64,000 bases of DNA, taken from positions 1-64,000 of the forward strand of contig NW_025765657.1 in the NCBI RefSeq assembly GCF_003918875.1, given 5' to 3'. Both the position numbers and the translations under genes were made by a program. Source of the DNA: Haliotis rubra. Taxonomy: Eukaryota. The notes under the pieces were generated by a model. It saw only the letters and a list, made by a program, of their open reading frames with translations. It searched no databases and was not told where the DNA came from. Of the stretch, positions 31,549 to 58,260 are shown piece after piece. Each line of letters opens with the position of its first letter. Positions within the stretch are counted from its first letter, which is position 1.

Positions 31549-31999
31549 ATGGACACTACTCCTCTGCTATCAGAACCAGAGGATGGATCCATCCAAGAAT
31601 CCCCGTATCACCTTCCACAGCCTCTTCGGGGTCCATCTCTGGATGAATTAGCTGGATGTGGTGTTGATGTTAGAAGCCCCGGTGACGACATTACAACGAC
31701 GGGCATCGACTTCAGGGACTACACGTCTCTCAGCACGAATGTCCAGCTGGACAGATTGAAAGAACACGAAGAACACGAACCAACTGTGAGAAAAGTCGTT
31801 TTTTCTCCTGATGCGACGACTGCTGATGCAGTTCCTTTGGACATCCCAAGACGTAACCCCATTCGTTCAGCATCAACATACAGTAATCAGGATCTCAGTG
31901 ACCTTGACAGCGTATCTACTTCCGCTCGTCACGATGGCCACTACACCTCTGCCAGTATCGAAGACAGGCACTCGAGACCTGTTCCATCTTTTAGAGCAG
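31549..31999 (+). CDS. Copy B exon 1: acidic Ser/Pro/Asp-rich, probably disordered N-terminus (MDTTPLLSEPEDGS...PVPSFRA)
   Basis: ORF 31549-32040 with donor CAG|GTAAGA at 31999/32000, phase 1 matching exon 2; homologous exon in the mirror copy at 8752-9229. Confidence 0.7.
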
Positions 32000-34900
32000 G
32001 TAAGACGTTAGACATCCTATGTTTCCTGGGATATGGGTAGTGGTAACCGTAGTTTCTTACATGCATATTTCTTCGTTTATGAAGGCATATAATGCGCTTT
32101 GGGGAATAAATACAAGATTGATTTCCAAAAAAAAAATAGGAAATCTTCACCAAAGACAGAGTCGACTACCATGTGTTATTGAATCAGTATCAAATGTCGA
32201 TGATACCAGGTGTTCAAGGAAAGAGGGGTATCATGAAATAAACACAAGGGAAATTAAATGCTTCTAAAAAAGAGGGGCGGTGGGGTAGCCTAGTGGTTAA
32301 AACGTTGGCTCGTCACGCCGAAGCCCCGGGTTCGATTCCCCACATGGGCACAATGTGTGAAGCCCATTTCTGGTGTCCCCCGCCGTGATGTTGCTGGAAT
32401 ATTGCTAAAAGCGGCGTAAAACTAAACTCAGTCAGTCAGTCAGTCTAAAAAAGAACGAAACATATCTTCAAAATTCGAAAATAACCAAGGCCTGCATGCC
32501 ACTGTCCCAATGAGACAGTAAAGACAGCAGTTCTGGCACATGCAACTGACGTACTTATATGTTGAATACATTGAACACATCGTCAATGAACTTTATTACA
32601 CATATATTTTGAATTTTCCTTTTTTGATGGGTAAAAGATGTGCCGGGCTGCTGACAGAAACATTTGATCATTGGTTCAAATCCCAGATTGGTTTGTCAGA
32701 CATTCACCATATGAAGCAGACCGTTATAAAGCTGTTCGGTACAGTGTTAAACCAACCTTACTGATCTTTCAAGATGACCAAATAATGACCTTACAGGCAC
32801 AACGGGCGGTGGGGTATCACAGTGTTAAAGCGTAAAGAGTGAGGGTTCGATTGCCCACACACTCGCTCACTCACTCACTCACTCACAGGCACAGGAGACG
32901 TGACAACCCAGCCTCCATCTGGTGAGATAATAAACGCGGACGAATCTGTACATCCACCACACTGGACAAGTGTTGCCCCTCCGCTCTCAGAAGGAAAGAG
33001 GTACCACGTCTTCTTTTCCTATGAAATCTCCGACAGAGAGTGGGTGGAGGAGGTCACCAGACGTCTAGAGTCGCCAGAGATGGGCTTCAGATGCAGCATG
33101 CACGAGAGAGACTTTCACGGAGGTAAGCGTATCATTGAAAACATCACCGAACACATCCGGCTGTCGGAGAAGACGGTGTTGGTGCTGTCTCCAGACTTCA
33201 TTCAGAGTCACTGGTGCATGTTTGAGATTGAGATGGGGATGATCCTGAGCATGGAGGAGAGCCAGCTGCTGGTGGTGCCTGTGATGGTGAAGCGATGCTT
33301 TGTACCCGACAGTATCAAGACCCTCACCTACATTGATGCAACTCCTGGTAATGACTGGTGGCAGCGGTTCATTGGGGCCATAGTTTCTAAAGGTGTGTTT
33401 CCTGATCCTGAAACTCTAAATACCTTAGTAGATACTGATCTAAATAATTACATTCCATACATTATCTTCCCAATACAACAATCACTATATTTGTTCAATT
33501 AAATAGTAATTGGACATTTTCGCCTAAAAGAAATGGATAAAATCCTATTTCTCATATCATCTCAATCTGTATACTTTTCAAGGAATATGTCGCGAAATTA
33601 CTTAAATTTACTGAAACCGAACCATATACCATTTTAGAGGACCTACGCGGTAACCTGACGGGTACAAAAGAATTGAGAATCGAGCCTCGTCACGGTAAGG
33701 CAGCTTTATAACGGTAAGGCATAATGTACTGTCCTAATGGTGATACATCCGACGGTATAAATGTGTACCAGTTACTGATAATGATATTGTTACCATATTA
33801 AGGACATTTTAATCGTATATTAAAAATCAACAAACCTGAAAGAAACATAGTATTCCCAGGAAATATCGAGAAAGTTGTTTTGGCAAATATCTAATATATG
33901 TATGTAAACTATAGTCGTTTTATTTCAAGGAATATATTAAGATATGATTCTCTTACAGTCTAAGTGTCTTTTCAGTAGTTTGTGAGACCTCCTTTCCATG
34001 CAATACATGACATACCCATGAAAGTTTGTAGGAAATTGCGTAACAGCGTATCCCGATATTCGACCACTTCTCTGTTCATATCCTCAACATGTCTAAGTCC
34101 TCTTTGGTTTATTCTGCCCTTCATTAGTCCCCGCACATTCTCAATAGGGTTAAGATCTGTGCTTGTAGCTGGGCCAGTTTAAAATTTGAACATCATTTTC
34201 GTGCGACAACCACTGTTTTGTGTTGCCCGCATTATCAAAATGGAAAATCCAATTACCTTCATACACTGTTCGGGCCGTTGGAAGGAGGTGATCACTTAAG
34301 ATGTCAACATATCGTTCCTTCGTCAAATTTCCAATGAAAATACACAACGGCGTCACTCCACGTGATATCCTACCCCACTGGTTAAATTTCGGGATATGTT
34401 TTGGGTGTTAGTAGATCGGTTTCACGGTCTCTTTTGTCCAAGATTTTTACACAGTTCGGAAAAAGCCAGACAGAACTTTCATCAAAAAAGAAAACATTAT
34501 CCCAATCTTGATTTTCGTGAGCACTACACCAGTTTAAACATCTTTCTTTCTTTCATCGATTGTGAGGGAATTCCCACAGGAGCTTGTAACGCTAAAAACT
34601 GCCGTCAAGGTGTGTACTGTCACTATCGGGGTCTTAGTACTATATAAAAGGAAAGGGATGTAACGAGGTCAACACACCAAGTTCGTTTCAGGGCGAATTC
34701 AACAATGCTCACTGTATTTATCCCAGTTAAAGTATGCACACATTTTCAAGCCAGTAGATTTACCGACAAAATAAGACATACAGCACAAAAGTCGAAGCCG
34801 TACTTTGGGAGCTAGGGTCTTCGGAAGCTCGGAAATCGTGATTTCTCGATTCCGAGCCAAAATCCCTGCTCAGAATTTGTAGTGGTAACTCACCAACTTT

Positions 34901-37900
34901 CTTGTTTATTTCACAGTTTACACAAACGACATGCACCAAAACATGTCGAACTGATGGCACCTGTCAGCGCGCTAGTCGCCATTCTTTCTGAGACACTTAC
35001 ACCTCACTGTCATAATGAGTTTACGTTCATTTATTCATCGCAAACTGAATCGTGTCGTGCCCGTTCGCCATTGACGACCTTATTATTTTGTAGGTAAATC
35101 TCGCAGGCGATCCGTGCAGTGCAGTTGTGTGCAGTTGAGCCTTTTATTTCAGAAACCATTACAACCTTCAAGCGTCCTTCACAAAACTCTCGAGAGTTAT
35201 ACCCTTTATGCTCTCCTTGCATACCGCTAAAGAAAACGGAGTTATCTCCCTTACACCAATGTTTAACTAAACATATTTTGTACCTTATTACGATATTTCA
35301 CAGTACTTACTAAACTTATTGGCCTTCCAGCCCCTGTCTTGTGCTCAATCCCAACTCCTGACTGAATATTCTTCAAAGTTCTGTATACTGTAGACAGAGG
35401 AATGTCATGTCTACCAGCTAACTCTTTTGCATTAGTCTTATCCCTTTCAAAATCATCTAGAACGAGGTTTCTTGCCTCTTCTGCTGTCAGACCTTACATG
35501 TCAACAAAGGAAGCCGTCTGCCACACCAGGGGAGATAACTGTTGATATAGTAAGGTTCATCATCAAGCCTGCAAGAGTTACCTCCCATATTGAGTACCTT
35601 ATTTCATAATGTAACACCTTTTTTCTAAATTCCGTTATCAGTATTTACAAAGATTTTCTCAATAACTTCTGGGAAAACTGTACATGAATTTATGTACGTG
35701 TTGTCCAGTTGTCAATATACGTTGAAAGTATCTGAGGTGATAGTGGTGCTATTTGATAGAGAAGATCACTTCACTACTGTTTGTCTTTAGGAAATATGGA
35801 TGCGTTGGTTGAGCTATCTTCCAACTTCAAGTGTCCCTTGGGAGAACAGTTGAGGACCCCTTATATACCCGAGCCGTTACTGAGACAGGGTGTTCAGGTA
35901 TGTTTTTGTTACTGATATGGGGTGTCCAAGTGTTGGTATCTTGCTGATACCAGTTATACAGTTGTGTATGTTGCTCAGGCCCAATATCCAGGATTGTTTC
36001 TGTTGCTGAGACCCAGTATCAGGTCTGTATTTGTTGCTGATACCAGGTATCCAGGTGTGTGTTTGTTGCTGATACGAGATATACAGGTATACTAAACGCC
36101 AAAAGAAACGTTACCCTCCTTCCTTAATGACGGAGGTACCTATTTTCAGCTGGCGTTGTGATGCGTGGACGTCCACTTCTTGGTCTGTCTACGGTGATCC
36201 CAGTCTGTCTAAAGCCCTGAATACGTCTTATAACCGTGATACGGTGGCATCCGAGGGCGTTGGCAACAGCATTGTATGTCGACCCCATCTGTACCATCCC
36301 ATTGACTCTTTCTCTCCCTTCAGCTGTTAATCGTGGCATATTTCTCGTACTTGTGTATCAGATCATGTCTTCTAGGCTCTCTTTATACCCTATGCAATCA
36401 TTCTGCATGTGAAATGGATGTAAATACTGTTTGAATATTGCTGCGTTTGGGCGATTGATATTGCCATGTGTAAAATGGAAATAGAAAAATGTTAGTTTGC
36501 AAGCAAAAATGTTAACAAAGATAATTGTAGATGTTCCTAAACATGTTTTCACAATATCAAAGACAGGTTTTACTTGTTTTCACTAATGCAAATCAGCAGA
36601 AAATGTTTTAAAAGACAAAAATCATAGCAATGATTATTTTACAAATTTACAAACTCTACAACAGTTGTTTCTTGTTTTAATAGTTGAAAAATGGTGACTT
36701 TAAATGGTTTCTCATTTTTCCCAAAGCAGAATTTAATTTCAACCTTTCTTTTGGACATCAACATCACTATTATTGGTTTATTTCGGCATGGACGAATATA
36801 GGACAATTAAACTCTTCTGAAAAAGATGCATTTCACCCAAATACGAATGCATTTGAGAATTTATTTTCGTGATTTGCATAAAGCTGTGTTGTTAAGCTTT
36901 ATTGTAAACTAAAACCTTCTAAAAATCATTGGTAGTTTTCAGTAATTCATAAAGGTAGGTGGGTGACGTTTCCTTTGGCGTCTAGTGCATGTGTTTGTTG
37001 CTGAGACCGGTTATACAGGTGTGTGTTTGTTGCTGAGACCCGTTATACAGAGGTGTTTTTGTTGCTGAGGCCCGGTATCCAGGTGTGTGTTTGTTGCTTA
37101 CACCCAGTATACAGGTGTGTGTGTGCTCCTGACACCCAGTATCTAGGTGTTGTTGTTGATACCAGGTATTCAGGTGTGTGCTTGTTGTTGAGACTCTGTA
37201 TCAGGTGTGTATGTTGCAGACACCTAGTATCCAGGTGTGTGTTTGTTCCTGAGATGCAGTATCAGCTGGGTGTGTGTTGCTGAAACCAGGTATAGAGGTG
37301 TGTGTTTGTTGCTAAGACCCAGTATCCAGGTGTGTGTTTGTTGCTGATACCAGGTATCCAGGTGTGTGTTTGTTGCTGACACCCAGTATCGAAGTGGGTG
37401 TATGTTGCTGATACCAGGTATCCAGGCGTGTTTGTTGCTGATACCAGGTATCCAGGTGTGTGTTTGTTGCTGATACCAGGTATCCAGGAGTGTGTTTGTT
37501 GCTGATACCAGGTATCCAGGTGTGTGTTTGTTGCTGACACCAAAATGTGTATGTTGCTGACACCCAGTATCGAGGCAGGTGTATGTTGCTGATACCAGGT
37601 ATCCAGTTGTGTGTGTAGGTTCCTGACACCCAGTATCAAGTGTGTGTATGTTGGTGACGACCGGTATCAGGTATGTGTTTGTTGCTGACAACCAGTATCC
37701 AGATGTGTGTATGTTGCTGACACCCAGTATCCAGGTGTGTGTATGTTGCTGACACCCAGTATCCAGGTGTGTGTTTGTTGCTGACAACCGGTATCAGGTA
37801 TGTGTTTGTTGCTTACACCCAGTATCCTGGTGTGTGTATGTTGGTAACACCCAGTATCCAGGCGTGTGTATGTTGCTGACACCCAGTATCAGGTATGCGT

Positions 37901-40900
37901 TTGTTGGTGACACCCTGTATCAGGTATGTGTTTGTTGCTGACGACCAGTATCCAGGTGTGTGTTTGTTGCTTACACCCAGTATCCAGGTGTGTGTATGTT
38001 GCTGACACCCAGTATCCTGGTGTGTGTATGTTGCTGACACCCAGTATCCAGGTGTGTGTTTGTTGCTGACAACCGGTATCAGGTATGTGTTTGTTGCTTA
38101 CACCCAGTATCCAGGTGTGTGTATGTTGCTGACACCCAGTATCCAGGTGTGTGTATGTTGCTGACACCCGGTATCCTGGTGTGTGTATGTTGCTGACACC
38201 CAGGATCCAGGTGTGTGTTTGTTGCTGACAACCGGTATCAGGTGTGTGTATGTTGGTAACATCCAGTAATCAGGTGTGTGTATGTTGCTGACACCCAGTA
38301 TCAGGTATGTGTTTGTTGGTGACACCCTGTATCAGGTATGTGTTTGTTGCTGACGACCAGTATCCAGGTGTGTGTATGTTGCTGACACCCAGTATCCAGG
38401 CGTGTGTATGTCGCTGACACCCGGTATCAGGTATGTGTTTGTTGGTGACACCCAGTATCAGGTATGTGTTTGTTGCTGACACCTTGTATCCGAGTGTGTG
38501 TATGTTGCTGACACCCAGTATCATGGTGTGTGTATGTTGCTGACACCCAGTATCCAGGTGTGTGTATGTTGCTGACACCCAGTATCCAGTTGTATGTATG
38601 CTGCTTACACCCAGTATCCAGATGTGTGTATGTTGCTGACACCCAATATCCTGGTGTGTGTATGCTGCTGACACCCACTATCCAGTTGTGTGTATGTTGG
38701 TAACACCCAGTATCCAGGTGTGTGTATGTTGCTGACACCCAGTATCAGGTATGTGTTTGTTGGTGACACCCTGTATCAGGTATGTGTTTGTTGCTGACGA
38801 CCAGTATCATGGTGTGTTTGTTGCTTACACCCAGTATCCAGGTGTGTGTATGTTGCTGACACCCAGTATCCAGGCGTGTGTATGTCGCTGACACCCGGTA
38901 TCAGGTATGTGTTTGTTGGTGACACCCAGTATCAGGTATGTGTTTGTTGCTGACACCTTGTATCCGAGTGTGTGTATGTTGCTGACACCCAGTATCATGG
39001 TGTGTGTATGTTGCTGACACCCAGTATCCAGGTGTGTGTATGTTGCTGACACCCAGTATCCAGTTGTATGTATGTTGCTTACACCCAGTATCCAGATGTG
39101 TGTATGTTGCTGACACCCAATATCCTGGTGTGTGTATGCTGCTGACACCCACTATCCAGTTGTGTGTATGTTGGTAACACCCAGTATCCAGGTGTGTGTA
39201 TGTTGCTGACACCCAGTATCAGGTATGTGTTTGTTGGCGACACCCTGTATCAGGTATGTGTTTGTTGCTGACGACCAGTATCCAGGTGTGTGTATGTTGC
39301 TGACACCCAGTATCCAGGTGTGTGTTTGTTGCTGACACCCAGTATCCGGGTGTGTGTATGTTGCTGACACCCAGTATCCAGGTGTGTGTATGTTGCTGAC
39401 ACCCAGTATCCAGGTGTGTGTATGTTGCTGACACCCGGTATCCTGGTGTGTGTATGTTGCTGACACCCAGTATCCTGGTGTGTGTATGTTGCTAACACCC
39501 AGTATCCTGGTGTGTGTATGTTGCTGAGAGTCAGGTATCTACTGAGACCAGGTGTTCAGATGTGTTTTTCTTATTGTGGATGGGTGTTTATATTGCTAAT
39601 CAGGACTCATAGGTTTTCTTATATCCCATGGATAACACAGTGAAGGATATCTGTAGTGTTCGGGCAACACATTCACATTGTTTGTCACTTGTAAGGCGTA
39701 ATCAAAACACTTTTCAAAATATGTACGTTTGGGGGATTTATTCTAGGTGTAGAGCCACTTTATTCATCTGGCCATTTACTTGTTCCTTCTTGGGCTGCCT
39801 GCGCAGGTGCCACCAGATGAGTTTCAACAATCGATGGACATCATTCGATCTGCAAGGTGCTGGTGTGCAGTCCTCTGTGACAACGGACCATGTTGTGTGC
39901 CAACCTTCACGATCCTCCTTCTAGCGGGAATCTCTACTGTAGCGCTGGGGGTGATAGCAAAAGGAGAGCCACCGCTAATAATGATATTTCCAGTGTTTTT
40001 CACATCTCTCTGGCTGTTCTTCGCTTTAACATTTTGCATTCAGAGACGAATAGTAAGTATATTCATATTATATCTGGTAATGTTACGTATAGTCAAATAG
40101 CTTCTCGGATTCCGTGAACTTTTTTGATGAAAGCAAATCATATAATCTTTGTGTTCATTACTTAAAGGAGTCTATTTTTTTTTTATTCCAATCTGAATAT
40201 TAATGCGAAAGCTAAAATTTAACCAGGAACTGAAAAATGTTGCAAAAACACGGAACAAAACAATGGTATTCATATCAAATACCATGCAGGAATTTTTTTC
40301 AAAATATATCCTTTCAAGTATAGTATTTGTTATAGTATGTCAGTGTGGTTGTGAGGGAATATTGTAAAAATAATACATGTTGTAAGGGGTGTGTGTGTGT
40401 GTGAGGGCATTTTGGTCGGCCGTTATGTTTTTATGACGTCACATATGTGTGACCTTTGTGTGACCTAATCGACTGTTGAACCCTTAAGCCCCCTTTGGGA
40501 GTCTCCTTCCGACCCAGGTGTGTGTGACCTTCAGGTTGACCTTGGTAGTCTGTGATTATTATTCAATTATTTTATGAGTTTGCCGACTCGAGTGTTCACA
40601 CAGCAAAATCTCTTTTCAACGTAGAATTAATATTACATAATGCATATGAGGGGAAATTAGTTGCTATTTATTAGGTCAAAAGCTGTGAAAATATCAGAGC
40701 GCATTTTGTTAAATAAAAGGTATCACTAGCCAGTTTAAAATATGCTGTCATTGGTGATTTGGTACACAAGGAACAACTCCGAAGTTCTGAGTATTTATTT
40801 TACATATCTGTGAACAATAAACGATTGTAGCTGTTAGCAAATAAAATTCATGCGCCATGTGGGCCTGTATATGATTATTGCGTGCGTGAATGGAGGGTGC

Positions 40901-43900
40901 AGTCTATGCACTACTACTACTACTAAGAGCAGAATCGCTTGCTCGCTGAGTGGGGCCGTAACTGAAGAGACATGTGACAGCTGTGATTGGGTGAAATAGT
41001 ATAAGGTGTTATGTTTGTTAAAATCACCTCCATCCAGTCATTAAAACTGACCACCATTTTAAGTATTTAATGCTGTCATTTGTATGACCATAACTTATGC
41101 TTATGCGAGAACAGATATGTTCAAGCAGGTGACAGTTGGTGCGGACCTGGGAGGGTTGATGTGTTTAGCTTCCTGTTGTGTGACTTCCTGTGCTCGCAAA
41201 GTTAGCCTGTTCAAGTTGACCAGAAATTGATTTTATTGTAATTTAAAGGCCAGACTGTAATCATGTGTACATGGAATGGTCGTTGATAATTTTCAGCGTG
41301 GTGGTGAATGTAGTGTTACGAATGGTCAGCTTCCGTTGTTTAACGGTCAGACTGTAATCATGAGTACATGGCATGGCTGTCGATAATTTTCAATGTGATG
41401 TTGAATGTATGCTGACAAGTGGTCAGCTTCCGCTATGTAGGGAGAGAAGTGTCTGACCGGAATTAAATACAGGAAATAGTAAGCAGTTTAGGACTGATGG
41501 TCACAGAATATCTCAAGTAGGGTGTCAACTGGTTGTGCAGTGATGAAATGATTAAGCATTTGTCATATATATTACTGAATAAAAAAAACAAACCTACATG
41601 TGTTCCTTCTGTAAAACATTCCAATGCTTTTACTCAAAATTTAAAATTGAACTTTACTCTCAAACTGCAAACATAAAAAAAAACCCACCCATGAATGCTA
41701 TATATGACATTTTTTTTGACATCATGTGACATTTGACATCATGTGACATAGGTTACTCACATGTCGTTAGCCACCTAATTCCACAGACAGTACAATGAAA
41801 TACTGGTGTAAGCTTCTTGTGACTGTATTGTGTCGGGTATGAAGATGTTGGGGCCTCCCGGTGTTAAGAATTGTATTCTGTGTATTCAGTGACATAGGGA
41901 GGATTATTTATCAGTTGTAAAACAAAGATTTATACAACGAACAGTTGTCTCATGTCAGTCCTCCAGCAATCCATTAAGTGAGTGAGTGAGTTTAGTTTTA
42001 TCTTACACTCAGTAATATCGCAGTTATATGGTCTGTAAATAATCGAGTCTGGACCAGACAATCCAGTGATCAACAGCATGATCATCGATCTACCCGGACC
42101 TTCACGGGTACAATACGTTAAGAAACAAGAGAGATATACAGATTTCATTGTTTATAAGCTCTGTTTCAAATGAGTAGGCTTTAGGATAGGAGCTCTCCCA
42201 AATGTCTACTTCACATGTTGTGCTAATCGTCTTATTGTCCTTCCTCATCGTCCTGTCGAGAACCTTCACTTGTTTGTAGAGCCATATAATACGTTCAGGA
42301 TAAGGTTTAATGTTCATCCGTTCTAAAAGATGCTTCACTATGTAGGTTTTCCCACAGGAGGTGGGCCCTGAGACGATCATGGTAAATGGGTGTATTAGTC
42401 TAAATTCTTCCAATGACTGGGTAGTACTCTCTGATGAATGTGGTTGCATCATAGGTGATCGTACTTGTGATGGTGGTGGTGGAGGAGGAAGAGCAGGTGC
42501 TTGTGGTGGTGGAGGAGGAGGAGGTGCTTGTGGTGGTGGTGGTGGCGGCTGCATTGCTCGTCTGTGTTGATTCCTGAGATGTCTAGGCATGGCATCCCTT
42601 CTGGAAAAATTGAAATTGCACACGGGACACGTTCTTGACTGCATGGTGGTCCGAGTCTAAATGGCAGGAAACCTGTCTACTGGCTGCTTTTATCTAAAAA
42701 GTCGTCTTCCGTTTCTTCATGGGACTCTGGGAGGAACGTTTTTTTCTAGCTTTAGATCCCCCATTCTCCTGCATCTGAATAAGAGGCTTGGCCTGTTCGA
42801 CCACTTGTTGAGTAGGGGTAACAAAATTAATCTTAGGTTGCTCTGTGGTTTCTAGTTTTTGTTTGCCTTTCTTCCACTCTGGGTCATACAGTTCAATATA
42901 GGGGGAGGAATAGTCATATTAGTCACGGCGTTCTGATTTTTTAAAATCTATGTCCCAGGACAATATAGATATTTCCGTTAGTCCATTCCTCCACCTTTGG
43001 TCAAGATGTAATGGTTCATTCAAACCCACCTTGACATTAAAAGGTTTGTTGCTGGGATAGAGGTGTTCACTATCTGTACTTCTGACCGTAATGTATTTAT
43101 CCATGTTTAGATTTAATCTTGGGGTTAGGTAACAAGTATCCCAAACTACTGCTGAGTAGTGCGGTCCACAAATTGGACCTTCCTTTGTCCAAGGACAAAT
43201 TGACAATACACGTAATGACTACAATGTAAATAATAATGTTTTTCCCAAAAATGTCCAGGTGTCAGATGATGTACTCCGCATAAGAGATACTGCTGCTTCA
43301 GTGTCTTCCATCATAGACGACTTTAAAAACAGGTTACGTTGTGCTTTTATTCTGTTTCACATCACCTGGGATCCATGAATTGTATTTTGTAGACCAATGG
43401 AACCATTTCACTAACACTCCTCTTTTTGACAATGTCTTGAATTCTATACTCCTGATCTGGATTTTCTACCACTGCTTGTAGCTCTGATGAATAAAAGGCA
43501 CCTTCAATAGGATCACCACCCCAATCTTTCAATATTTACATGTCATTTCCTTGAGACCAATATCTTCTTATTATTGTAAAAAAATCACCAGACTATTTCT
43601 CTTGATATTCTCTGTCAAAAGTTCTCTTCAGATGACTCACTCTGACTTTATCCCCCACTTTGAAAGTGAACTTCTTTTTACTCTGTTTCACCTGGCGGGG
43701 TTTAATCAAATACTGAGAGAGTCTCACTTCATCTTCATTTTTTGAGTTACACTAGCAGGAGACTGTCCTAAGGAACGATGTTTAGTGTGATTGTAACTCT
43801 TGACTACATCTGGTAAGATATCCATATATCTGTAGGTAAAGTGTTTCAACATGTATCGATACAATCTCATTTTAATGGTTTTAATCACTCTCTCAGTATA

Positions 43901-46900
43901 GGGGGCCTTGGTTTCATTCAGTGTAAACATTTGGGTTGCCTTGTGCTTTTTCAAAGAGGCTTTTACCCACCAATTCTTAAATTCTGATCCCATGTCGGAT
44001 TGAAAAATACCAGGCCTACGATCTTGTGTCTTCCATAAATGGGTCAATGCTTTCACCACTTCTTGTCCCTTTGTAGATTTGAGTGGATACACCCATAGAT
44101 ATCGTGAAAATAGATCTATGATGACCAATAAATACTTCACACCATCGTTGTACTTTGAAAGTGATGTCTAAACCTTCCACCACATAGTGTCTTCTTGGAA
44201 ATGTTCTCCAAACTTGATGAGTCATAGTATAGTTCTCCTGACCTTTGAGCCATTTCTTGATACGATGTAGACCAATTTTAAACTGACCCTCTGCTTTCAC
44301 AGCTTCATACAACTTCTTGGGTCCAGAACAACTACTAGCGTGTTTTGGGGTCATAATAAATCCTATTCAAGTACTCTTCCCAAGGTGCCATCTCAAATAC
44401 AACTGAACATGACTAACATGCATCATGCTATATTAACAAAACCCAAGACGAAAATACAATACAAGGTTTTTATTTATATCAAGTGTCATATATAGCATTC
44501 ATGGATGTTTTTTTTTATGTTTGCAGTTTAAGAGCAAAGTTCAGTTTTAAGATTTTGAGTAAAAGCACTGGAAAGTTTTACAGGAGAACAAATGTAGGTT
44601 TGTTTTCTTATTCAGTAATATATATGACAAATGCTTAATCATTTCATCACTGCACAACCAGTTGACACCCTACTTGAGATATTCAGTGACCATCAGTCCT
44701 AAACTGCTTATTTAATTCCGGTCAGACACTTCTCTCCCTACATAACGGGAAGCTGACCACTTGTCAGCATACGTTCAACATCACATTGAAAACTATCGAC
44801 AGCCATGCCATGTACTCATGATTACAGTCTGACCTTTAAACAACGGAAGCTGACCATTTGTGACACTACATTCACCACCACGCTGAAAATTATCAACGAC
44901 CATTCCATGTACACATGATTACAGTCTGGCCTATAAATTACAATAAAACAATTTCTGGTCAACTTAAACAGGCTAACTTTGCGAGCACAGGAGGCCACAC
45001 ACAACAGGAAGCTAAACACATCAACCCTCCCAGGTCCGCACCAACTGTCACCTGCTTGAACATATCTGTTCTCGCATAAGCATAAGTCATGGTCATACAA
45101 ATGACAGCATTAAATACTTAAAATGGTGGTCAGTTTTAATGACTGGATGGAGGTGATTTTAACAAACATAACACCTTATACTATTTCACCCAATCACAGC
45201 TGTCACATGTCTCTTCAGTTACGGCCCCACTCAGCGAGCAAGCGATTCTGCTCTTAGTAGTAGTAGTGCATAGACTGCACCCTCCATTCACGCACGCAAT
45301 AATCATATACGGGCCCACATGGCGCATGAATTTTATTTGCTAACAGCTACAATCGTTTATTGTTCACAGATATGTAAAATAAATACTCAGAACTTCGGAG
45401 TTGTTCCTTGTGTACCAAATCACCAATGACAGCATATTTTAAACTGGCTAGTGATACCTTTTACTTAACAAAATGCGCTCTGATATTTTCACAGCTTTTG
45501 ACCTAATAAATAGCAACTAATTTCCCCTCATTGTGTAATATTAATTCTACGTTGAAAAGAGATTTCGCTGTGTGAACACTCGGCAAACTGATAAAATAAT
45601 TGAATAATAATCACAGACCACCAAGGTCAACCTGAAGGTCACACATACACACACACCTGGGTCGGAAGGAGACTCCCAAAGGGGGCTTAAGGGTTCTACA
45701 GTCGATTAGGTCACAAAAAGGTCACACATATGTGACGTCATAAAAAAAAATGGCCGACCAAAATTGGTTGTTTGGGCATATTCCCTACCCCACACAAAAG
45801 CGGTATGTAAAACGCCACTCACTCACTCGCCCAAGACTGACATTTACTTCCTGAAATATCTTATCTTATAGCAATGCCCAACAGAATGCCTACAAAGCCA
45901 GAGCTGAGACAACCTAGACTTTAATAATAATTTTACACTTGAGATAGATTCCTGTTTCAATTTATTCTCTGGGCTGTTGGAATCCAAAGAAAGATTTTTG
46001 GCGTCTTCATAGAATCTGTCTTTATGAAATCTATTCTCATCTAGATTGAGCCAAAACATCAACTCATCGCGAAATCCTTATAAATGATGGTGACATTTTG
46101 AATAATACTTGAATAATCTGTGTAAATAATTTGTACTCCCCGAAAATCGTCAAAATGTGATATAAGAACATATATTTTCATTCCAGAGACGGTCTCGACT
46201 CCGAAAAGCAGTTGCTGAAGTCAACGCGATATTTCTGAAGTACAACGTCATCGTAGGATATAAGATGCAAACGGCTGGTTGCATTTTGACCCGGACATAT
46301 GTCAGTACTCGTAACGTTTTTTGAAATCGCATGTTCTCAACAGAGATCATTGCACTCTCTATCTGGCAATCACCTCAATTTCATTGCACCATTGGTACAG
46401 GGGTGGCCCAACAGCCTAGGGCATTGTAATTCGCCCTGCAAATTTACGTCTCTTTAGCGTACCTGAAGCATACAAGTTCGATTGTCCACATGGGTACAAT
46501 GTATGAAGCCCATTTCTGGTGTCTCCAATACCCGACTCCCCCCCTCCAGTGATATTGGTGGAATACTGCTAAAAGCGGCGTAAAACTAAACTCACTCACA
46601 CTCACCCATGATTTTTTAAAGTTTGTAAGTAAAGGGAGTGCTCACAGGATTCAAATAATGTTTAATTTTGTAACACTTTTGCCATGAGATCTCCTACATC
46701 AGGATGAATTGTGACATATTTGTTTTTCTTTTTTTGTCCGAAAAGGAAGACCGTATGTGTCTAATATTTTCACACCTAATTGGCCTTTCTGGAGCCCTTA
46801 GAACTCATCTCTTCTAAGGATTTTATTATTTTAAATGTGATGACTCTTCCTTATTCTTAATGGTAACTACATGTTGAGCAAGGGTCTTGGATATTCAATT

Positions 46901-49390
46901 TCTTTGTTAAAACGAAAGCGACCTTAGAATGATCTTTCTTGTTCATCATGTCTACTTGTTCATGCCATTTAATGAAGTAAACTTATTTTTTCATTATTAG
47001 ATATAGTTCTGATGCTAATAATGCTGTGTTCTTGGTTCGAGTTAGTTTCACTTTGATAAAAAAGGACACTTCTTTCATAGAATACGTGTGTATACTTCCC
47101 ATCAAAAGTTTAGACGTACGAGTGTCAATATAGCCACTTACTTCAGCCAGCTGTTCTTAACTAAATTTTGCAAAATATTCCATACTGCCTGAAGGTACTG
47201 TTTACACATGAACTGATGTATTGTTAAACAAATTCGTAAGGTCGGTAAGATTGTTGTCATGAGTTAAAAAAAAATTAAAAATCAGTGAAATTTGGCGAAT
47301 TCTTAACAAAACTTTACACCAAAACGCAGATGTTCACATGCACGATATTTGCACATCCTTATCAGCAATTTGATGCATAATCCTCGTACAATTCATATGC
47401 ATAAGGTTTGCAGTTGGTTCCCGCAAGATAGTTGTGAAATCAATGTTCGATACCATATATATATTCATAACATATAGTGAGTGTTTTAAGTGGGTCTAAA
47501 CTTTTGATGGGAAGAGTATTAAGAAGTCCATCGCTATTTTCAGCTCCAATTTTGGTTTTATAATCCAACGGAATGCAAGGTACGTACGAAACTGTTCATG
47601 CTCTTTTCATTTTTAATGATGATATTGTATAACTTGAAAAGTGTACGTTGACATTCTTTGATGTAAAGTAATCATAAACATCCAGAATAGTCAGATTCGT
47701 CATGTTATATGATCTATACACAGATATAGTTGAGAGTAATAGTGCACACAATTTGATATCGATTATTGCTTTATAAGGTTCCCGGTTAACGTCAGTTGTG
47801 TAATCTCATAGTGATGTAAACTAGTGATACTAGTGACTCATGTTTGCAGTGTGTATTTCGTCGTTCCCCAGGTAACTGTTTACCTGTGAAGGTTGGAATG
47901 CTTGTCGCCAGAGGCGACAAACAAGATCAGGTGGTCAGGATCGCTGACTAGGTTGATGCATGAGGTATCCCCTTTGCATAGATCATTGCTCGTACTGTCA
48001 GTCACTGGATTGTCTGGTCCATTGTTTACAGACCGCCTGGATTATTTACATATCGCCGCCGTATAGCTGGAATATTGTCGTGTGCAGCGTTAAACAACAA
48101 ACATACCAAAGAGAAAAGTTTTGATTACTTTCAGAACTTATTGGCCAATTTTCTGGAAGGAATTGAAGGAAGACATCTTGCATCTGGTTCAAATGCAGAC
48201 AAGGTTAGTACTGTATTTATTTTGTTTGTTATATATGAATCATACCTTCTCTAGCTCATTTCTGACAATCACGATCCCAAACGTTCAGTAGATCAGAAGC
48301 AGTCGTAAAATCGTTAGCACCTTTTCAAAATTAATTTTCCTTGTTTTTGTGACGCAAATGAATTCAGTGAATCAATGTTGAGTTGGGTCAGTGATCCTCT
48401 CATTAAGGCTTAGGCCAGGGATATTGTTGGAAATGAATGGACCAAGGATGTAGTCAGTAAGGGTTGGGCCGAAGATGCTCTTGTAATGGCTGAGCTGCAG
48501 ATGCAGTCATTTAAGGTTGGGCCGAGGATGTTCTTGTAATGGCGGGGCTGGAGATGCAGTCATTTAGGATTGGGCTAAGGATGCTCTAGTGATGACTGGC
48601 CCAGGGATGCAGTCAGTGGGGCTTGGGCCAAGGATGCTCTAGTGATGACTGGGCCAGGGATGCAGTCAGTGGGGCTTGGGCCAAGGATGCTCTAGTGATG
48701 ACTGGGCCAGGGATGCAGTCAGTGGGGCTTGGGCCAAGGATGCTCTAGTGATGACTGGGCCAGGGATGCAGTCAGTGGGGCTTGGGCCAAGGATGCTCTA
48801 GTGATGACTGGGCCAGGGATGCAGTCAGTGGGGCTTGGGCCAAGGATGCTCTAGTGATGGCTGAGCTTGAGATGCTGTTACAAAAGACTGGGCTGCTGCT
48901 GCAGTCAGTTGGGTTGGGCCGAAGATGCTCTTGTAATGGCTGGGCTGGAGATGCAGTCAGTTGGGTTGGGCCGAGGATGCTCTTATAATGGCTGAGCTGG
49001 AGATGTAATAGTTGGGTTGGGCAGAGGATGCTCTTGTAATGGCTGAGCTGGAGATGCAGTCAGTTGCCTTTTAGTCGATGAACAAGATCGTCTTATCTGG
49101 GGCCAAGGTTGCCATTATATTAGTATATTCTGAAGACTGCGTGAAATTCACCCGTAGGTCAATTCGTTGCCTTCAAATAAAAATTTTGCCACAATACTGT
49201 AAGGATCAACTTGTCTTCACAGGCATCGCAGCTGTTTCAACACCACTGCCTTGACTACACTTCCGCTTACAACGAAGGTCAGCTCAAGGTCAAACATGGC
49301 GCTAGGCACGTCCGCAACGCCATCTGCCTTTGTCAGTTTGTAGAGGACAAGTACTCAGAGGGCCAGCGTCTTCCTATCATGATCGTATGA
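31549..49390 (+). CDS. Spliced gene (copy B): TIR domain + 2 TM + TMEM268-like C-terminal region, 564 aa
   Basis: Exons 31549-31999, 32889-33392, 35791-35897, 39807-40052, 46187-46300, 47544-47579, 48135-48203, 49223-49390. All seven introns are GT-AG with compatible phases (1,1,0,0,0,0,0). Total 1695 nt = 565 codons, open from ATG to TGA. An upstream UTR exon or extra small exons cannot be excluded. Confidence 0.85.
32274..32443 (+). mobile_element. tRNA-derived SINE family 1, full length with TSD; mirror 8327-8491
   Basis: A box TAGCCTAGTGG, B box GGTTCGATTCC, (CAGT)n tail, TSD TCTAAAAAAGA. Other copies at about 15487-15656(-), 17795-17950(-), 19257-19413(-), 22096-22250(+), 23394-23552(+), 46475-46605(+), 50915-51082(-), 60802-60960(+). 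Confidence 0.92.
32889..33392 (+). CDS. Copy B exon 2: TIR domain
   Basis: Box 1 YHVFFSY, box 2 CSMHERDFHGG, VLVLSPDFIQSHWCMFEI, LTYIDA, box 3-like WW. Acceptor CACAG at 32888, donor AAG|GTGTGT. Confidence 0.95.
34030..34520 (-). mobile_element. Degenerate Tc1/IS630 DDE transposase fragment; mirror ~6140-6640 (+)
   Basis: YVDILSDHLLP..WIFHFDNA..ILNWP..DLNPIENV across frameshifts. Confidence 0.8.
35791..35897 (+). CDS. Copy B exon 3: (G)NMDALVELSSNFKCPLGEQLRTPYIPEPLLRQGVQ
   Basis: TTTGTCTTTAG acceptor, CAG|GTATGT donor, phase 1 to 0, no stop; mirror at 4699-4799. Confidence 0.8.
36090..36985 (-). mobile_element. Tc1/mariner 5' fragment (transposase HTH 36124-36339) splitting the minisatellite; mirror ~3630-4500 (+)
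   Basis: MPRLTAEGRERVNGMVQMG..VANALGCHRITVIR..FRQTG.TVDRPRSGRPRITT: paired-like HTH followed by the GRPR motif. Confidence 0.85.
36985..39530. repeat. 31-32 bp minisatellite array in intron 3 of copy B (~2.5 kb) with a 474-bp higher-order duplication
   Basis: Unit ~GTTGCTGACACCCAGTATCCAGGTGTGTGTAT. Identical translations at 38427-38738 and 38901-39212 (offset 474). Degenerate units also at 35876-36090. Confidence 0.97.
39807..40052 (+). CDS. Copy B exon 4: VPPDEFQQSM, Cys cluster, two hydrophobic TM helices
   Basis: GCAG acceptor, ATA|GTAAGT donor. Segments FTILLLAGISTVALGVIA and LIMIFPVFFTSLWLFFALTFCI. Confidence 0.85.
42102..42644 (-). pseudogene. C2H2 finger + poly-Pro + truncated Maverick packaging ATPase (A32/FtsK-like)
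   Basis: CPVC-x12-HLRNQH; FRLIHPFTMIVSGPTSCGKT (Walker A)..PERIIWLY, then similarity is lost and no Walker B is seen. Confidence 0.8.
42919..43104 (-). pseudogene. Maverick minor capsid (penton)-like N-terminal fragment
   Basis: MDKYITVRSTDSEHLYPSNKPFNVKVGLNEPLHLDQRWRNGLTEI matches the recalled pattern TLxSxxSxxxYPxNxxxxFxVxLxxxLxLxGxWxVGLxEI. Confidence 0.55.
43098..43313 (-). pseudogene. Small hydrophobic Maverick ORF remnant (IIIYIVVITCIVNLSL...LWTALLSSSLGYLLPNP)
   Basis: Hand translation in a frame not in the ORF track; motif recalled from small membrane ORFs next to Polinton integrases. Confidence 0.5.
43334..44391 (-). pseudogene. Maverick retroviral-like (rve) integrase with C-terminal chromodomain, frameshifted
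   Basis: MAPWEEYLNRIYYDP..GPKKLY..WLKGQENYT; YLLVIIDLFSRYLWVYPLK; QSDMGSEF; ERVIKTIK; YNHTKHRSLG; FKVGDKVR; VKW..NSWIP. The segment with the first catalytic Asp appears deleted. Confidence 0.9.
46187..46300 (+). CDS. Copy B exon 5: RRSRLRKAVAEVNAIFLKYNVIVGYKMQTAGCILTRTY
   Basis: TTTTCATTCCAG acceptor, GTCAGT donor, 114 nt phase 0-0; basic stretch directly after TM2. Confidence 0.8.
47095..47516. mobile_element. Tc1/mariner-type MITE in intron 5
   Basis: 21-bp perfect inverted repeat CTTCCCATCAAAAGTTTAGAC (47095-47115 / 47494-47514), TA flanks. Confidence 0.8.
47544..47579 (+). CDS. Copy B exon 6 (36-nt micro-exon): LQFWFYNPTECK
   Basis: TATTTTCAG acceptor, AAG|GTACGT donor, phase 0-0; fits the recalled TMEM268 pattern QLWFVYFDxxxC. 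Confidence 0.7.
48135..48203 (+). CDS. Copy B exon 7: NLLANFLEGIEGRHLASGSNADK
   Basis: CTTTCAG acceptor, AAG|GTTAGT donor, 69 nt; length and splice sites conserved in the mirror copy 63630-63698. Confidence 0.75.
48400..49065. repeat. 53-bp VNTR in intron 7 (mirror 62845-63400)
   Basis: GGGCCAAGGATGCTCTAGTGATGACTGGGCCAGGGATGCAGTCAGTGGGGCTT starting at 48625, 48678, 48731, 48784, with a partial unit at 48837; fewer perfect units in the mirror arm. Confidence 0.93.
49223..49390 (+). CDS. Copy B exon 8 (terminal): ASQLFQHHCLDY...RHVRNAICLCQFVEDKYSEGQRLPIMIV*
   Basis: TTGTCTTCACAG acceptor, TGA at 49388-49390; RH-x5-CxCQxxE motif like the TMEM268 C-terminus; frame conserved in the mirror copy. 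Confidence 0.85.
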   Translation, partial: ASQLFQHHCLDYTSAYNEGQLKVKHGARHVRNAICLCQFVEDKYSEGQRLPIMIV

Positions 49391-57200: not shown

Positions 57201-58260
57201 CACACTTACTGTGATCACCAAATGGGTGACATGATAGTGCAGTTAATCCTCTGCTTATTCCATCTTGGTTTCCTTTGTTTTGGCTGATCATGTAGTTGAA
57301 ACATTTTTGTAGATACCTGATTACTTTGGTGCTCAGTGTCTTGTGTTTTTTCTGCAGCTGATACAGTTTATTACCTAAGCCTTTCCTCACATGATTTTTG
57401 TCAGACTGTTTAACAATGTCCTTGTCTACATTTGCCCTTAATCTGGCTATACTTGTAGCATCATCATCTCCTATGATTGAGGTCACATGTACATCCTCTT
57501 CCTTAGCTTTAACTACCATCTCAGATACCATGTCAGGTTCCATACCTTTACTGGAACCATCCCAGTTCTTTCTGCAGTCATGCTCTTCAGGAATCCTGTT
57601 AGCTTTATTTGCTTGATGACAGATTCGGCAACTCTTTGAGCGGATCGAATAGCCAAGAACTTTGCCAGTTTTGTTCCCGATCATTGAGCAGTGTCCTGAA
57701 ACATATAAATGTCTGTTTATTTATTTCAATTTTCTGCTTGAATATGATATATTTATTTTAACAAGTTTAGCTCTAGTGTCTTGATATTATCTGACCAAAA
57801 CACAAACCCATCAATAACACTGTTACATGTCTTGTAGTAGTCAACATACTGGTCTGAAGGATAAAGTAAAACAAGGAAATAGAACTAATATAACTGAGAG
57901 TTTAATAAATCACAAACATAAAAAATAATGTGACAATGGTTACTTTAATCATGCTGTGAACATTTGTACTATTGAAATCTAACTAATTGAAAACACATCA
58001 ACACAAAACCCAGATCTTAAAACCTTTTTCATCTGAAATGATGCCAGAGAAGGTACCACTTATCACTTTCAAGAAAACATATTGATACATTTACATCATT
58101 ACACAGAGAGATATACCTAATAGTCTTGTATTATGCATAAGTATAAACAAGCAACTAGAATTAGAATGAATTACCAGACAGGCTGTCATAGCATTTTCCA
58201 CTGCCCCGCTTCTGCCATCCTGCATCAACACTCACACAGATTCTTCGGCTGCCGGGAGAA
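54203..58260 (-). pseudogene. 5'-truncated spliced gene: Mutator-like/Kolobok-type DDE transposase fused to DEDDh exonuclease and PML-C-like tail
   Basis: Exons 58175-58260, 56905-57695, 56252-56391, 55753-55940, 54203-54999, all GT-AG and phase-compatible. Transposase motifs VDAGWQKRGSG, CxxC..HxC, GMEPD, IGDDD, DKNH, HPFGDHSKCDDTWC, TQSND. Exonuclease motifs FDLETTG, GHNIKLYD, FLDTL, AHDALSD. One in-frame TAG at 55784-55786. Confidence 0.85.

What the first reader, a model, noticed from the sequence alone, without database searches (positions are those of the whole stretch)
31549..49390. Hidden 8-exon gene: membrane-anchored TIR fused to a TMEM268-like domain, with no ectodomain
Seen: eight phase-compatible exons, several too short for the ORF track, splice into an open 564-aa frame: acidic N-terminus, TIR, LLRQGVQVPPDEFQQSM, Cys cluster, TM1, short loop, TM2, RRIRRSRLRKAVAEVNAIFLKYNVIVG, LQFWFYNPTEC, and finally RHVRNAICLCQFVE. 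Established: TLR/IL-1R proteins have an ectodomain and a C-terminal TIR, and MyD88/SARM1 have no TM hairpin. Inference: four motifs in order match my recollection of vertebrate TMEM268 (GIQVP; AN..L.H..LLG; QLWFVYFD..C; RH...CPCQLIE), which has no TIR. The positive-inside rule puts both TIR and C-terminus in the cytosol. This suggests a poorly characterised invertebrate innate-immune receptor or adaptor class.
Basis: partly seen in the sequence, partly recalled or inferred. Interest (0 to 1): 0.9.

Follow-up and report, generated by a model that had tools for sequence, protein, structure and literature searches.

The report
Abalone membrane-anchored TIR–TMEM268-like adaptor gene
This is a real abalone gene, already in RefSeq as an unnamed protein, that joins a Toll/IL-1-receptor signalling domain to a two-helix membrane anchor related to human TMEM268; the same design occurs in other molluscs, a worm, an acorn worm and apparently amphioxus, so it is a further member of a little-studied family, not a new class.

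Summary
The gene has nine coding exons: a 57-nt exon at 33638-33694 was missed. The nine-exon product (583 aa, all GT-AG) is 100% identical to RefSeq "uncharacterized protein LOC124272339 [Haliotis rubra]". The window is the first 64 kb of contig QXJH01001689.1, so the gene is not hidden.

The TIR call is solid: Pfam TIR_2 at 2.4e-21, closest to the TLR1/2/6/10 TIR domains.

The TMEM268 call, made from memory, is correct:
- Weak but consistent DUF4481 hits appear in 12 of 15 family members.
- The C-terminal half aligns at 1e-17 to a Capitella protein carrying TIR plus a full-length DUF4481 (79.6 bits).
- hhalign gives 99.2% probability.
- Mouse, human and cow TMEM268 are the top three Foldseek hits.

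There is no signal peptide. The hydrophobic hairpin has a 5-residue loop followed by a polybasic stretch, which puts both ends in the cytosol.

The same architecture occurs in other molluscs, an annelid, a hemichordate and a protein named "TIRB". Most likely function: a membrane-tethered TIR adaptor or regulator. The window also holds a pseudogene copy and the 3' end of a paralogue.

The parts
31549..31999 (+). Coding exon 1: start codon and acidic, Ser/Thr/Pro-rich N-terminal region (residues 1-151)
   Evidence: One search gives the exact model, donor GAGCAG|gtaaga; 30 acidic vs 14 basic residues in the first 175, and no hydrophobic signal-like segment. 77% identical to H. asinina.
32889..33392 (+). 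Coding exon 2: TIR domain
   Evidence: Pfam TIR_2 1.6e-21 on the exon alone and 2.4e-21 in the full protein, residues 191-305. Nearest solved structures are the TLR2 and TLR1 TIR domains, 2e-16 and 1e-15.
33638..33694 (+).
   Evidence: tblastn with P0001 gives 95% identity. Needed for 100% identity to P0004. Phase 1 on both sides, so skipping it keeps the frame.
35791..35897 (+). Coding exon 4: start of the DUF4481-like module. A 32-bp minisatellite begins at its donor.
   Evidence: aligns to the start of the Capitella DUF4481 region; tandem array from 35895.
39807..40052 (+). Coding exon 5: amphipathic helix, Cys cluster, TM1 (about residues 403-424), 5-residue loop, TM2 (about 430-452)
   Evidence: Hydropathy segments 400-427 and 428-452. 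phmmer of this exon against 1.84 billion proteins finds only three abalone representatives. Phase 0/0 cassette, skipped in H. asinina isoform P0007.
46187..46300 (+). Coding exon 6: polybasic juxtamembrane stretch, helix and first beta strand
   Evidence: Seven basic residues in the 18 after TM2. The best DUF4481 Pfam stretch maps here and to exon 7 (residues 464-515, profile 130-180).
47544..47579 (+). Coding exon 7, 36 nt: second beta strand with an invariant Cys
   Evidence: C167 of the domain alignment is invariant in all 15 sequences.
48135..48203 (+). Coding exon 8, 69 nt
49223..49390 (+). Coding exon 9: C-terminal helices with the conserved RH.R...C.CQ..E motif, and the stop codon
   Evidence: The motif is conserved in the Capitella and Ptychodera proteins.
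1381..9229 (-). Decayed paralogue (pseudogene): equivalents of exons 1-5 with stops and frameshifts
   Evidence: tblastn with P0001, P0004 and P0005. The remainder would lie beyond the contig start.
62499..63698 (-). Last two coding exons (63630-63698 and 62499-62666) of the intact neighbouring paralogue LOC124272341; the two genes lie tail to tail
   Evidence: The P0005 exon model in L002 translates exactly; coordinates converted from L002.

Best explanation
The stretch is the nine-exon Haliotis rubra gene LOC124272339. It encodes a 583-aa protein with five parts: an acidic, probably disordered N-terminus; a TLR-type TIR domain; a short linker; and a TMEM268/DUF4481-type module. That module holds a Cys cluster, a hairpin of two hydrophobic helices joined by about five residues, a polybasic stretch, and a small alpha/beta C-terminal domain. 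There is no signal peptide, so the TIR stays in the cytosol, the hairpin returns the chain to the same side, and there is no ectodomain. I infer that it works as a membrane-tethered TIR adaptor or regulator. The DUF4481 module would fix it to a membrane, possibly helped by palmitoylation of the Cys cluster, and may bind tails of membrane partners as mammalian TMEM268 does with integrins. The TIR would make homotypic contacts with TLR or MyD88 TIR domains, so that signalling is assembled or damped at that membrane. Shown here: the gene model, the two domains, their homology and the architecture's wide distribution. Inferred: topology (hydropathy only), partners, sign of regulation and palmitoylation.
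For: - Gene model: identical to the RefSeq protein and a called gene on the H. rubra contig.
- TIR: 76.9 bits against a cut-off of 28. Closest solved relatives are TLR2/1/6/10, Hydra TRR-2, oyster TIR-STING, MyD88 and TIRAP.
- DUF4481, Pfam: the orthologue P0001 scores 25.4-28.7 bits (cut-off 25). Twelve of 15 relatives hit the same profile region.
- DUF4481, alignment: P0004 vs Capitella TIR+DUF4481 gives 6e-49 over 450 residues, and the C-terminal halves alone 1e-17. hhalign gives 99.2%, E 7.8e-20.
- DUF4481, fold and features: TMEM268 of mouse, human and cow are Foldseek ranks 1-3, E 2.6e-7 to 1.2e-6, TM 0.59-0.60, and the next hit is at 0.04. The nearest protein-atlas clusters are DUF4481/TMEM268 at 0.86-0.89.
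- Topology: two hydrophobic segments, a short loop (KGEPP), 7 basic residues after TM2 and no N-terminal hydrophobic segment.
- Human TMEM268: two adjacent TM helices (PMC6748091). It binds ITGB4 and the CD11b C-terminus, protects CD11b from lysosomal degradation, and supports antibacterial defence (PMC11169502).
- Purifying selection on the TIR between paralogues: dN/dS 0.11.
Against: - No expression, localisation or interaction data for any abalone member were available.
- The window's own protein is below the Pfam gathering score for DUF4481 (14.6-18.6 bits).
- The BB-loop proline of TLR and MyD88 TIR domains (RD..PG) is glycine here, and is absent throughout the family. Canonical MyD88-type contacts are therefore not assured.
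- The structure model is only moderate (pLDDT 70, pTM 0.67, 15 sequences).
- Topology rests on a Kyte-Doolittle scan and the positive-inside rule, not on a dedicated predictor.
Confidence: 0.6

Rival explanations
1. It is a trafficking or stabilising factor. The DUF4481 module does what mammalian TMEM268 does, protecting membrane receptors from endosome-lysosome degradation. The TIR only serves as a handle to select TIR-bearing receptors (TLRs) as clients. Control would then act on receptor abundance, not on signal relay.
For: TMEM268 stabilises ITGB4 and CD11b through binding their cytoplasmic parts (PMC6748091, PMC11169502). Homology of the module is shown. The TIR is most like receptor TIR domains.
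Against: No evidence that the stabilising activity is ancestral to the family. Sequence identity to vertebrate TMEM268 is only 16-17% in the structural alignment.
Confidence: 0.2
2. The TIR is an enzyme: an NAD+-cleaving effector of the SARM1, plant or bacterial type, held on a membrane by the hairpin and switched on by clustering.
For: A Glu follows the conserved WC motif (SHWCMFEIE), as in NADase TIR domains. There are weak Pfam hits to the bacterial ThsB_TIR (3.1e-4) and CAP12-PCTIR_TIR (0.15) models, and PDB hits to Roq1 and Cat1 at about 1e-4.
Against: The same Glu is present in TLR2, which signals as a scaffold (alignment). The strongest matches by ten or more orders of magnitude are TLR and MyD88-type TIR domains. 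No SARM1 match was listed.
Confidence: 0.1
3. It is a gene-prediction chimera: a TIR gene (exons 1-4) and a separate TMEM268-like gene (exons 5-9) wrongly joined across the 3.9-kb minisatellite intron.
For: No transcript data were seen here. Intron 4 holds a 2.5-kb minisatellite with many CAGGT decoys. An H. rubra model without a TIR exists (LOC124263876, P0003/P0008).
Against: The DUF4481 homology already starts in exon 4, upstream of that intron. Phases match at all junctions. The same fusion occurs in an annelid and a hemichordate, and in 13 models from five abalone species. The two paralogues keep the whole arrangement.
Confidence: 0.03

Closest known systems
Vertebrate TMEM268 (C9orf91), Pfam DUF4481 / PF14800
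   Same: Cys-rich stretch, hairpin of two adjacent TM helices, beta hairpin and C-terminal helices with the RH...C.CQ..E motif. The fold match covers residues 1-246 of the module and about 37-344 of TMEM268. Human TMEM268 has two adjacent TM helices at 104-126 and 130-152 (PMC6748091).
   Different: TMEM268 has no TIR domain. Identity is 16-17% in the structural alignment. The window protein is below the Pfam gathering score.
Deposited TIR + DUF4481 proteins: Capitella teleta CAPTEDRAFT_224550 (P0016) and Ptychodera flava P0018/P0017. By fold only: molluscan TIR proteins A0A6J8CUB2 and A0A210QRL8, and 'TIRB' A0A0A0UEG1
   Same: Same order of domains, TIR then DUF4481 module with a TM hairpin. 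P0004 aligns to P0016 from the start of the TIR to the C-terminus (6e-49). The C-terminal model matches TIRB residues 199-492 at E 2e-8, TM 0.69. Protein-atlas clusters of 54 and 84 mostly molluscan TIR proteins match the module.
   Different: Only 26-28% identical outside abalones. The abalone genes have a long acidic N-terminus and lack the 40-residue insert that the distant members carry after the beta hairpin. From memory, unverified: TIRB is the amphioxus bbtTIRB of Peng et al. 2015 (J Immunol 195:3110, cited in PMC6043800), reported as endosomal with a cytosolic TIR that binds MyD88. That paper was not held.
TLR / IL-1R receptors and Hydra TIR-only receptors (HyTRR)
   Same: A membrane protein with a cytosolic TIR. 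The TIR is closest in sequence to TLR2/1/6/10 and HyTRR-2.
   Different: No signal peptide, no LRR or Ig ectodomain, TIR on the N-terminal side of the membrane segments, and a hairpin instead of a single pass.
Membrane-targeted sorting adaptors TIRAP/Mal and TRAM (functional analogy only)
   Same: Cytosolic TIR adaptors held at membranes, with a polybasic juxtamembrane stretch. The TIR is significantly similar to TIRAP (2e-7).
   Different: Those use lipid binding or myristoylation, not a TM hairpin, and share no homology outside the TIR.
CHIC1/2 and Erf4/GOLGA7 (PF10256), cysteine-rich hydrophobic proteins
   Same: Weak fold and feature resemblance: a Cys cluster plus a hydrophobic hairpin plus a small beta element. 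Foldseek E 0.07-0.13; atlas TM 0.46; GCP16 chain 8hf3_B TMt 0.56 but E 2.2.
   Different: Not significant. A lead for palmitoylation only, not evidence of kinship.

Membership tests
TIR domain superfamily (Pfam TIR_2 / TIR) | Profile match above the curated cut-off | tested here: met
   TIR_2 76.9 bits (cut-off 28) and TIR 48.2 bits (cut-off 21.3), residues 189-305.
TIR domain superfamily (Pfam TIR_2 / TIR) | Box 1, box 2 (BB loop RD..PG) and box 3 (FW) motifs of signalling TIR domains | tested here: inconclusive
   Box 1 (YHVFFSY) and a WW-type box 3 are present. Box 2 reads RDFHGG, so the BB-loop proline is glycine. The proline is absent in every family member retrieved.
TMEM268 / DUF4481 (PF14800) | Pfam profile match at or above the gathering score (25 bits) | tested here: not met
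   The window protein scores 14.6 bits (whole) and 18.6 bits (C-terminal half). The H. asinina orthologue scores 25.4 and 28.7 bits, Capitella P0016 79.6 bits over profile positions 2-293, and Ptychodera P0018 31.5 bits.
TMEM268 / DUF4481 (PF14800) | Significant homology to bona fide DUF4481 domains by pairwise and profile-profile comparison | tested here: met
   BLASTP of the C-terminal halves, P0004 vs P0016, gives 1e-17. hhalign of the abalone alignment vs the Capitella/Ptychodera alignment gives 99.2%, E 7.8e-20, over 211 columns.
TMEM268 / DUF4481 (PF14800) | Same predicted fold as TMEM268 | tested here: met
   Foldseek against Swiss-Prot AlphaFold DB: mouse, human and cow TMEM268 are ranks 1-3, E 2.6e-7 to 1.2e-6, TM by query 0.59-0.60, over the full module. 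An arthropod DUF4481 cluster gives TM 0.65. The model is moderate (pLDDT 70).
TMEM268 / DUF4481 (PF14800) | Two adjacent TM helices with a very short loop | tested here: met
   Kyte-Doolittle segments 400-427 and 428-452. Human TMEM268 has 104-126 and 130-152 (PMC6748091). No dedicated topology predictor was available.
Toll-like receptors / IL-1 receptors | Signal peptide and LRR or Ig ectodomain N-terminal to one TM helix, with a C-terminal TIR | tested here: not met
   No LRR or Ig Pfam hit. No hydrophobic N-terminal segment (highest 19-residue Kyte-Doolittle mean among windows starting in the first 45 residues: 0.03). The TIR precedes the membrane segments.
MyD88 / SARM1 adaptors | Death domain (MyD88) or ARM plus SAM domains (SARM1) beside the TIR | tested here: not met
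   No such Pfam hits at E up to 10.
ecTIR-DC families of Gerdol et al. 2017 | Assignment to one of the numbered conserved TIR families by domain architecture | not testable with these tools
   The defining paper (Dev Comp Immunol 2017) is not held. Papers that cite it do not describe a TM-hairpin family.

The most novel reading that the evidence does not exclude
The DUF4481 module would be the ancestral membrane anchor of a bilaterian TIR adaptor, and vertebrate TMEM268 its TIR-less remnant. In that case TMEM268's recently reported role in antibacterial defence would be inherited from an ancient TIR pathway. In abalones the family is being diversified by swapping or separately preserving the TM-hairpin cassette. 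That cassette is 30% identical between two neighbours that are 85-98% identical elsewhere, with dS 0.55 against 0.087, which may retarget the same TIR to different membrane partners.
Probability: 0.3. Interest if true: 0.5.

Novelty: new member of a known kind. Interest (0 to 1): 0.3.

Why it matters
The gene adds abalone members, and a small local cluster (one intact gene, one intact neighbour, one pseudogene), to a family of membrane-anchored TIR proteins that is widespread in invertebrates and almost unstudied.

The useful result is the firm link between that family and TMEM268/DUF4481. Of the 8.4 million papers searched, none connects TMEM268 with a TIR domain: the two that hold both words are unrelated, and only one mentions DUF4481. 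Mammalian TMEM268 has just been tied to antibacterial immunity (PMC11169502). The link gives a testable idea for what the membrane module does next to a TIR, and for where TMEM268 came from.

For genome annotation, it shows that Pfam's DUF4481 threshold misses most abalone members.

Tried and rejected
- **Pfam on single exons.** Only the TIR was found; the downstream exons are too short for DUF4481.
- **phmmer of the TM exon** against 1.84 billion representatives returned only three abalone proteins.
- **Word-indexed protein searches** with the C-terminal region of P0001, and with a six-sequence abalone alignment, found only abalone proteins and no stand-alone TMEM268. I could therefore not build a TMEM268 alignment for a direct hhalign. 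I used DUF4481-positive Capitella and Ptychodera proteins as the bridge.
- **First AlphaFold model.** With six sequences it was too poor to search with (pLDDT 49.6). The 15-sequence model was used instead.
- **Solved structures.** No solved structure resembles the module: hmmsearch best E 3.9, Foldseek PDB best E 0.5.
- **Literature.** TMEM268+TIR, DUF4481, C9orf91+TIR, bbtTIRB and TIRB+amphioxus gave nothing relevant. Gerdol 2017 and Peng 2015 are not held.
- **Positive selection on the hairpin** is rejected as the sole explanation of its divergence. dS is raised as much as dN, and the low-identity zone runs on into the intron.
- **Receptor reading** is rejected: the loop is 5 residues and there is no signal peptide.


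Full report
**1. What is in the sequence**

The window is eukaryotic DNA with no N runs. Each has an AG acceptor and a GT donor.

A phmmer search with the exon that encodes the hydrophobic hairpin (window 39807-40052) against 1.84 billion representative proteins gave only three hits, all from abalones. The best was a 583-aa Haliotis asinina protein, P0001.

Aligning P0001 back to the window with tblastn recovered every reader exon.

I refined each junction against the H. rubra protein P0004. This gives nine exons:
- 31549-31999
- 32889-33392
- 33638-33694
- 35791-35897
- 39807-40052
- 46187-46300
- 47544-47579
- 48135-48203
- 49223-49390

All are GT-AG. Together they make 1752 nt, and the 583-aa translation is identical to P0004, RefSeq "uncharacterized protein LOC124272339 [Haliotis rubra]".

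The look-up of that protein places the gene at 31549-49390 of contig QXJH01001689.1 (assembly GCA_003918875.1). The window is therefore the first 64 kb of that contig.

Exon 3 is phase 1 on both sides, which is why its omission went unnoticed. An H. cracherodii relative (P0014) is annotated without the equivalent exon, so the shorter form may exist as an isoform.

**2. The TIR half**

The exon 2 product matches Pfam TIR_2 at 1.6e-21 on its own and at 2.4e-21 in the full protein, residues 191-305.

Against all PDB sequences, the nearest are:
- TLR2 at 2e-16, then TLR1, TLR6 and TLR10
- Hydra Toll-receptor-related 2
- the oyster TIR-STING fusion
- MyD88 and TIRAP

Plant and prokaryotic TIR domains appear only near 1e-4.

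The BB-loop reads RDFHGG, so the proline of the RD..PG motif is glycine. That proline is missing in all relatives retrieved.

There is no signal peptide. The highest 19-residue hydropathy mean among windows starting in the first 45 residues is 0.03, and the first 175 residues are acidic and rich in Ser/Thr/Pro.

**3. The TMEM268-like half**

(a) Pfam. The window protein hits DUF4481 (PF14800, the TMEM268 family) only weakly, at 14.6-18.6 bits against a gathering score of 25. The H. asinina orthologue passes with 25.4 bits for the whole protein and 28.7 for the C-terminal half. Twelve of the 15 relatives scanned hit the same model, mostly at the same profile positions, about 124-181.

(b) A bridge protein. 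A search with the 481-aa abalone paralogue P0002 found Capitella teleta CAPTEDRAFT_224550 (P0016, 566 aa) and two Ptychodera flava proteins. P0016 carries a TIR and a full-length DUF4481 match: profile 2-293 of 293, 79.6 bits, 3.5e-22. The window protein aligns to it from the start of the TIR to the last residues at 6e-49. The C-terminal halves alone align at 1e-17.

(c) Profile-profile. The abalone C-terminal alignment against the Capitella/Ptychodera alignment gives 99.2% probability, E 7.8e-20, over 211 columns.

(d) Protein-language-model neighbours. The three nearest clusters to the C-terminal half are DUF4481/TMEM268 clusters, scoring 0.86-0.89 with 190-197 shared features.

(e) Fold. 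A first AlphaFold model from six sequences was poor (pLDDT 49.6). With 15 sequences it reached pLDDT 70.2 and pTM 0.67. Foldseek against Swiss-Prot models ranks mouse, human and cow TMEM268 first to third. Their E-values are 2.6e-7 to 1.2e-6, TM by query is 0.59-0.60, and the whole module is aligned. The next hit is at E 0.04.

Homology to TMEM268 is established. Formal Pfam membership of this particular protein is not.

**4. Topology**

A Kyte-Doolittle scan finds exactly two hydrophobic segments, 400-427 and 428-452. They are separated by a short turn (KGEPP) and followed by seven basic residues in the next 18.

With no signal peptide, the simplest reading is TIR in the cytosol, a hairpin through or into the membrane, and a cytosolic C-terminal domain. 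Nothing is exposed beyond a few residues. Human TMEM268 has the same arrangement of two adjacent TM helices (PMC6748091).

The Cys cluster directly before TM1 is a plausible palmitoylation site. The only support is a weak resemblance to the palmitoylated CHIC/Erf4-type proteins, so this remains a lead.

**5. Distribution and prior knowledge**

The same architecture is annotated in abalones:
- H. asinina, H. rubra (at least four full-length loci, plus a TIR-less partial model), H. rufescens and H. cracherodii
- three length classes: about 580, about 480 and about 550 aa

Beyond abalones:
- The annelid Capitella and the hemichordate Ptychodera carry it.
- Two protein-atlas clusters of 54 and 84 mostly molluscan TIR proteins match the C-terminal module.
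- AlphaFold DB cluster representatives that match the module include two "TIR domain-containing proteins", several TMEM268 entries, a C. elegans PH-domain protein and, as best hit, A0A0A0UEG1 named "TIRB" (E 2e-8, TM 0.69, its residues 199-492).

From memory, TIRB is the amphioxus bbtTIRB of Peng et al. 2015, reported as endosomal with a cytosolic TIR that binds MyD88. The paper's existence is confirmed by its citation in PMC6043800. I could not read the paper itself, and the database row gives no organism.

In the searchable literature, the only two papers holding both TMEM268 and TIR are unrelated (interferon-gamma transcriptional memory; a colorectal-cancer drug study). Only one paper mentions DUF4481.

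The architecture is therefore known to databases and probably to one functional study. The TMEM268 connection seems not to have been discussed.

**6. How it most likely works**

Shown:
- a cytosolic TLR-type TIR fused to a TMEM268-type membrane module
- the TIR under purifying selection between paralogues (dN/dS 0.11)

Inferred: a membrane-tethered TIR adaptor or regulator that meets TLR or MyD88 TIR domains at a defined membrane.

Mammalian TMEM268 binds cytoplasmic parts of integrins and shields CD11b from lysosomal degradation, with a positive role in antibacterial defence (PMC6748091, PMC11169502). The module may therefore also bring partner binding or control of receptor turnover, which is the main rival. 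An NADase role is less likely given the TIR's nearest relatives. A chimeric gene model is very unlikely given cross-phylum conservation of the fusion.

**7. Surroundings**

- A decayed copy lies on the minus strand at 9229-1381, with stops and frameshifts in the equivalents of exons 1, 2, 4 and 5.
- The last two exons of the intact paralogue LOC124272341 (P0005) lie on the minus strand at 63630-63698 and 62499-62666, tail to tail with the gene.
- The two intact genes are collinear at 84-94% nucleotide identity, introns included, except around the hairpin.
- There, protein identity is 30% against 85-98% elsewhere. Both dS (0.55 vs 0.087) and dN (0.71 vs 0.035) are raised, and the low-identity zone continues into the downstream intron. 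This points to a mosaic history of the hairpin cassette rather than simple positive selection.
- An H. asinina isoform (P0007) skips that cassette altogether.

**8. Verdict**

The domain interpretation is correct and now tested. The claims of a hidden gene and a new class do not hold. It is a new, uncharacterised member of an existing invertebrate TIR-DUF4481 family.

Noticed in passing
window 39894-40043 (exon 5, codons 403-452) vs L002 9018-9251: The TM-hairpin segment is 30% identical between the two adjacent paralogues, which are 85-98% identical everywhere else. Nei-Gojobori dS is 0.55 and dN 0.71 in the hairpin, against 0.087 and 0.035 in the rest. The low-identity zone extends into the downstream intron. 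This looks like a swapped or separately preserved cassette.
   Followed up: partly
window 39807-40052; protein P0007 (H. asinina isoform X2): The TM-hairpin exon is a phase 0/0 cassette. An annotated H. asinina isoform of a paralogue skips it, which would give a soluble TIR-DUF4481 protein without the membrane anchor.
   Followed up: partly
window 40428-45746 (inside intron 5): A roughly 5.3-kb insertion has about 1.1-kb terminal inverted repeats that are 97-100% complementary. On the minus strand it encloses an Adenovirus IVa2-like packaging-ATPase fragment with a C2H2 finger (42105-42644) and an rve integrase core (43727-44140). It looks like a truncated, recently inserted Polinton/Maverick-type element. 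It is absent from the paralogue's intron.
   Followed up: partly
window 35895-36088 and 36990-39527 (intron 4); L002 6799-8712: A 32-bp minisatellite (about 80 copies, 84% matches) starts at the last codon and donor of exon 4, so it repeats CAGGT-like donor mimics. The same array sits in the paralogue's intron, so it predates the duplication.
   Followed up: partly
window 1381-9229, minus strand: A pseudogene copy of the TIR-DUF4481 gene (exon 1-5 equivalents) has several stop codons and frameshifts. It lies head to head with the intact gene about 22 kb away, and its 3' part would lie beyond the contig start.
   Followed up: partly
window 48433-49066 (intron 8): Tandem arrays of period 52-53 bp (8 and 3 copies, 90% matches) create a run of short repeated ORFs just upstream of the last exon.
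   Followed up: no
window about 55784-58298, minus strand (L001 34236-36750): A called 403-aa gene with a Pfam Mutator (PF20700) hit lies between the two TIR-DUF4481 genes. It overlaps another first-stage note on a DDE transposase.
   Followed up: no
AlphaFold DB entry Q18202: A C. elegans PH-domain protein has a C-terminal part (residues 141-395) with the same fold as the module (E 1.5e-7, TM 0.66). This suggests the DUF4481 anchor is combined with different cytosolic heads in different phyla.
   Followed up: no
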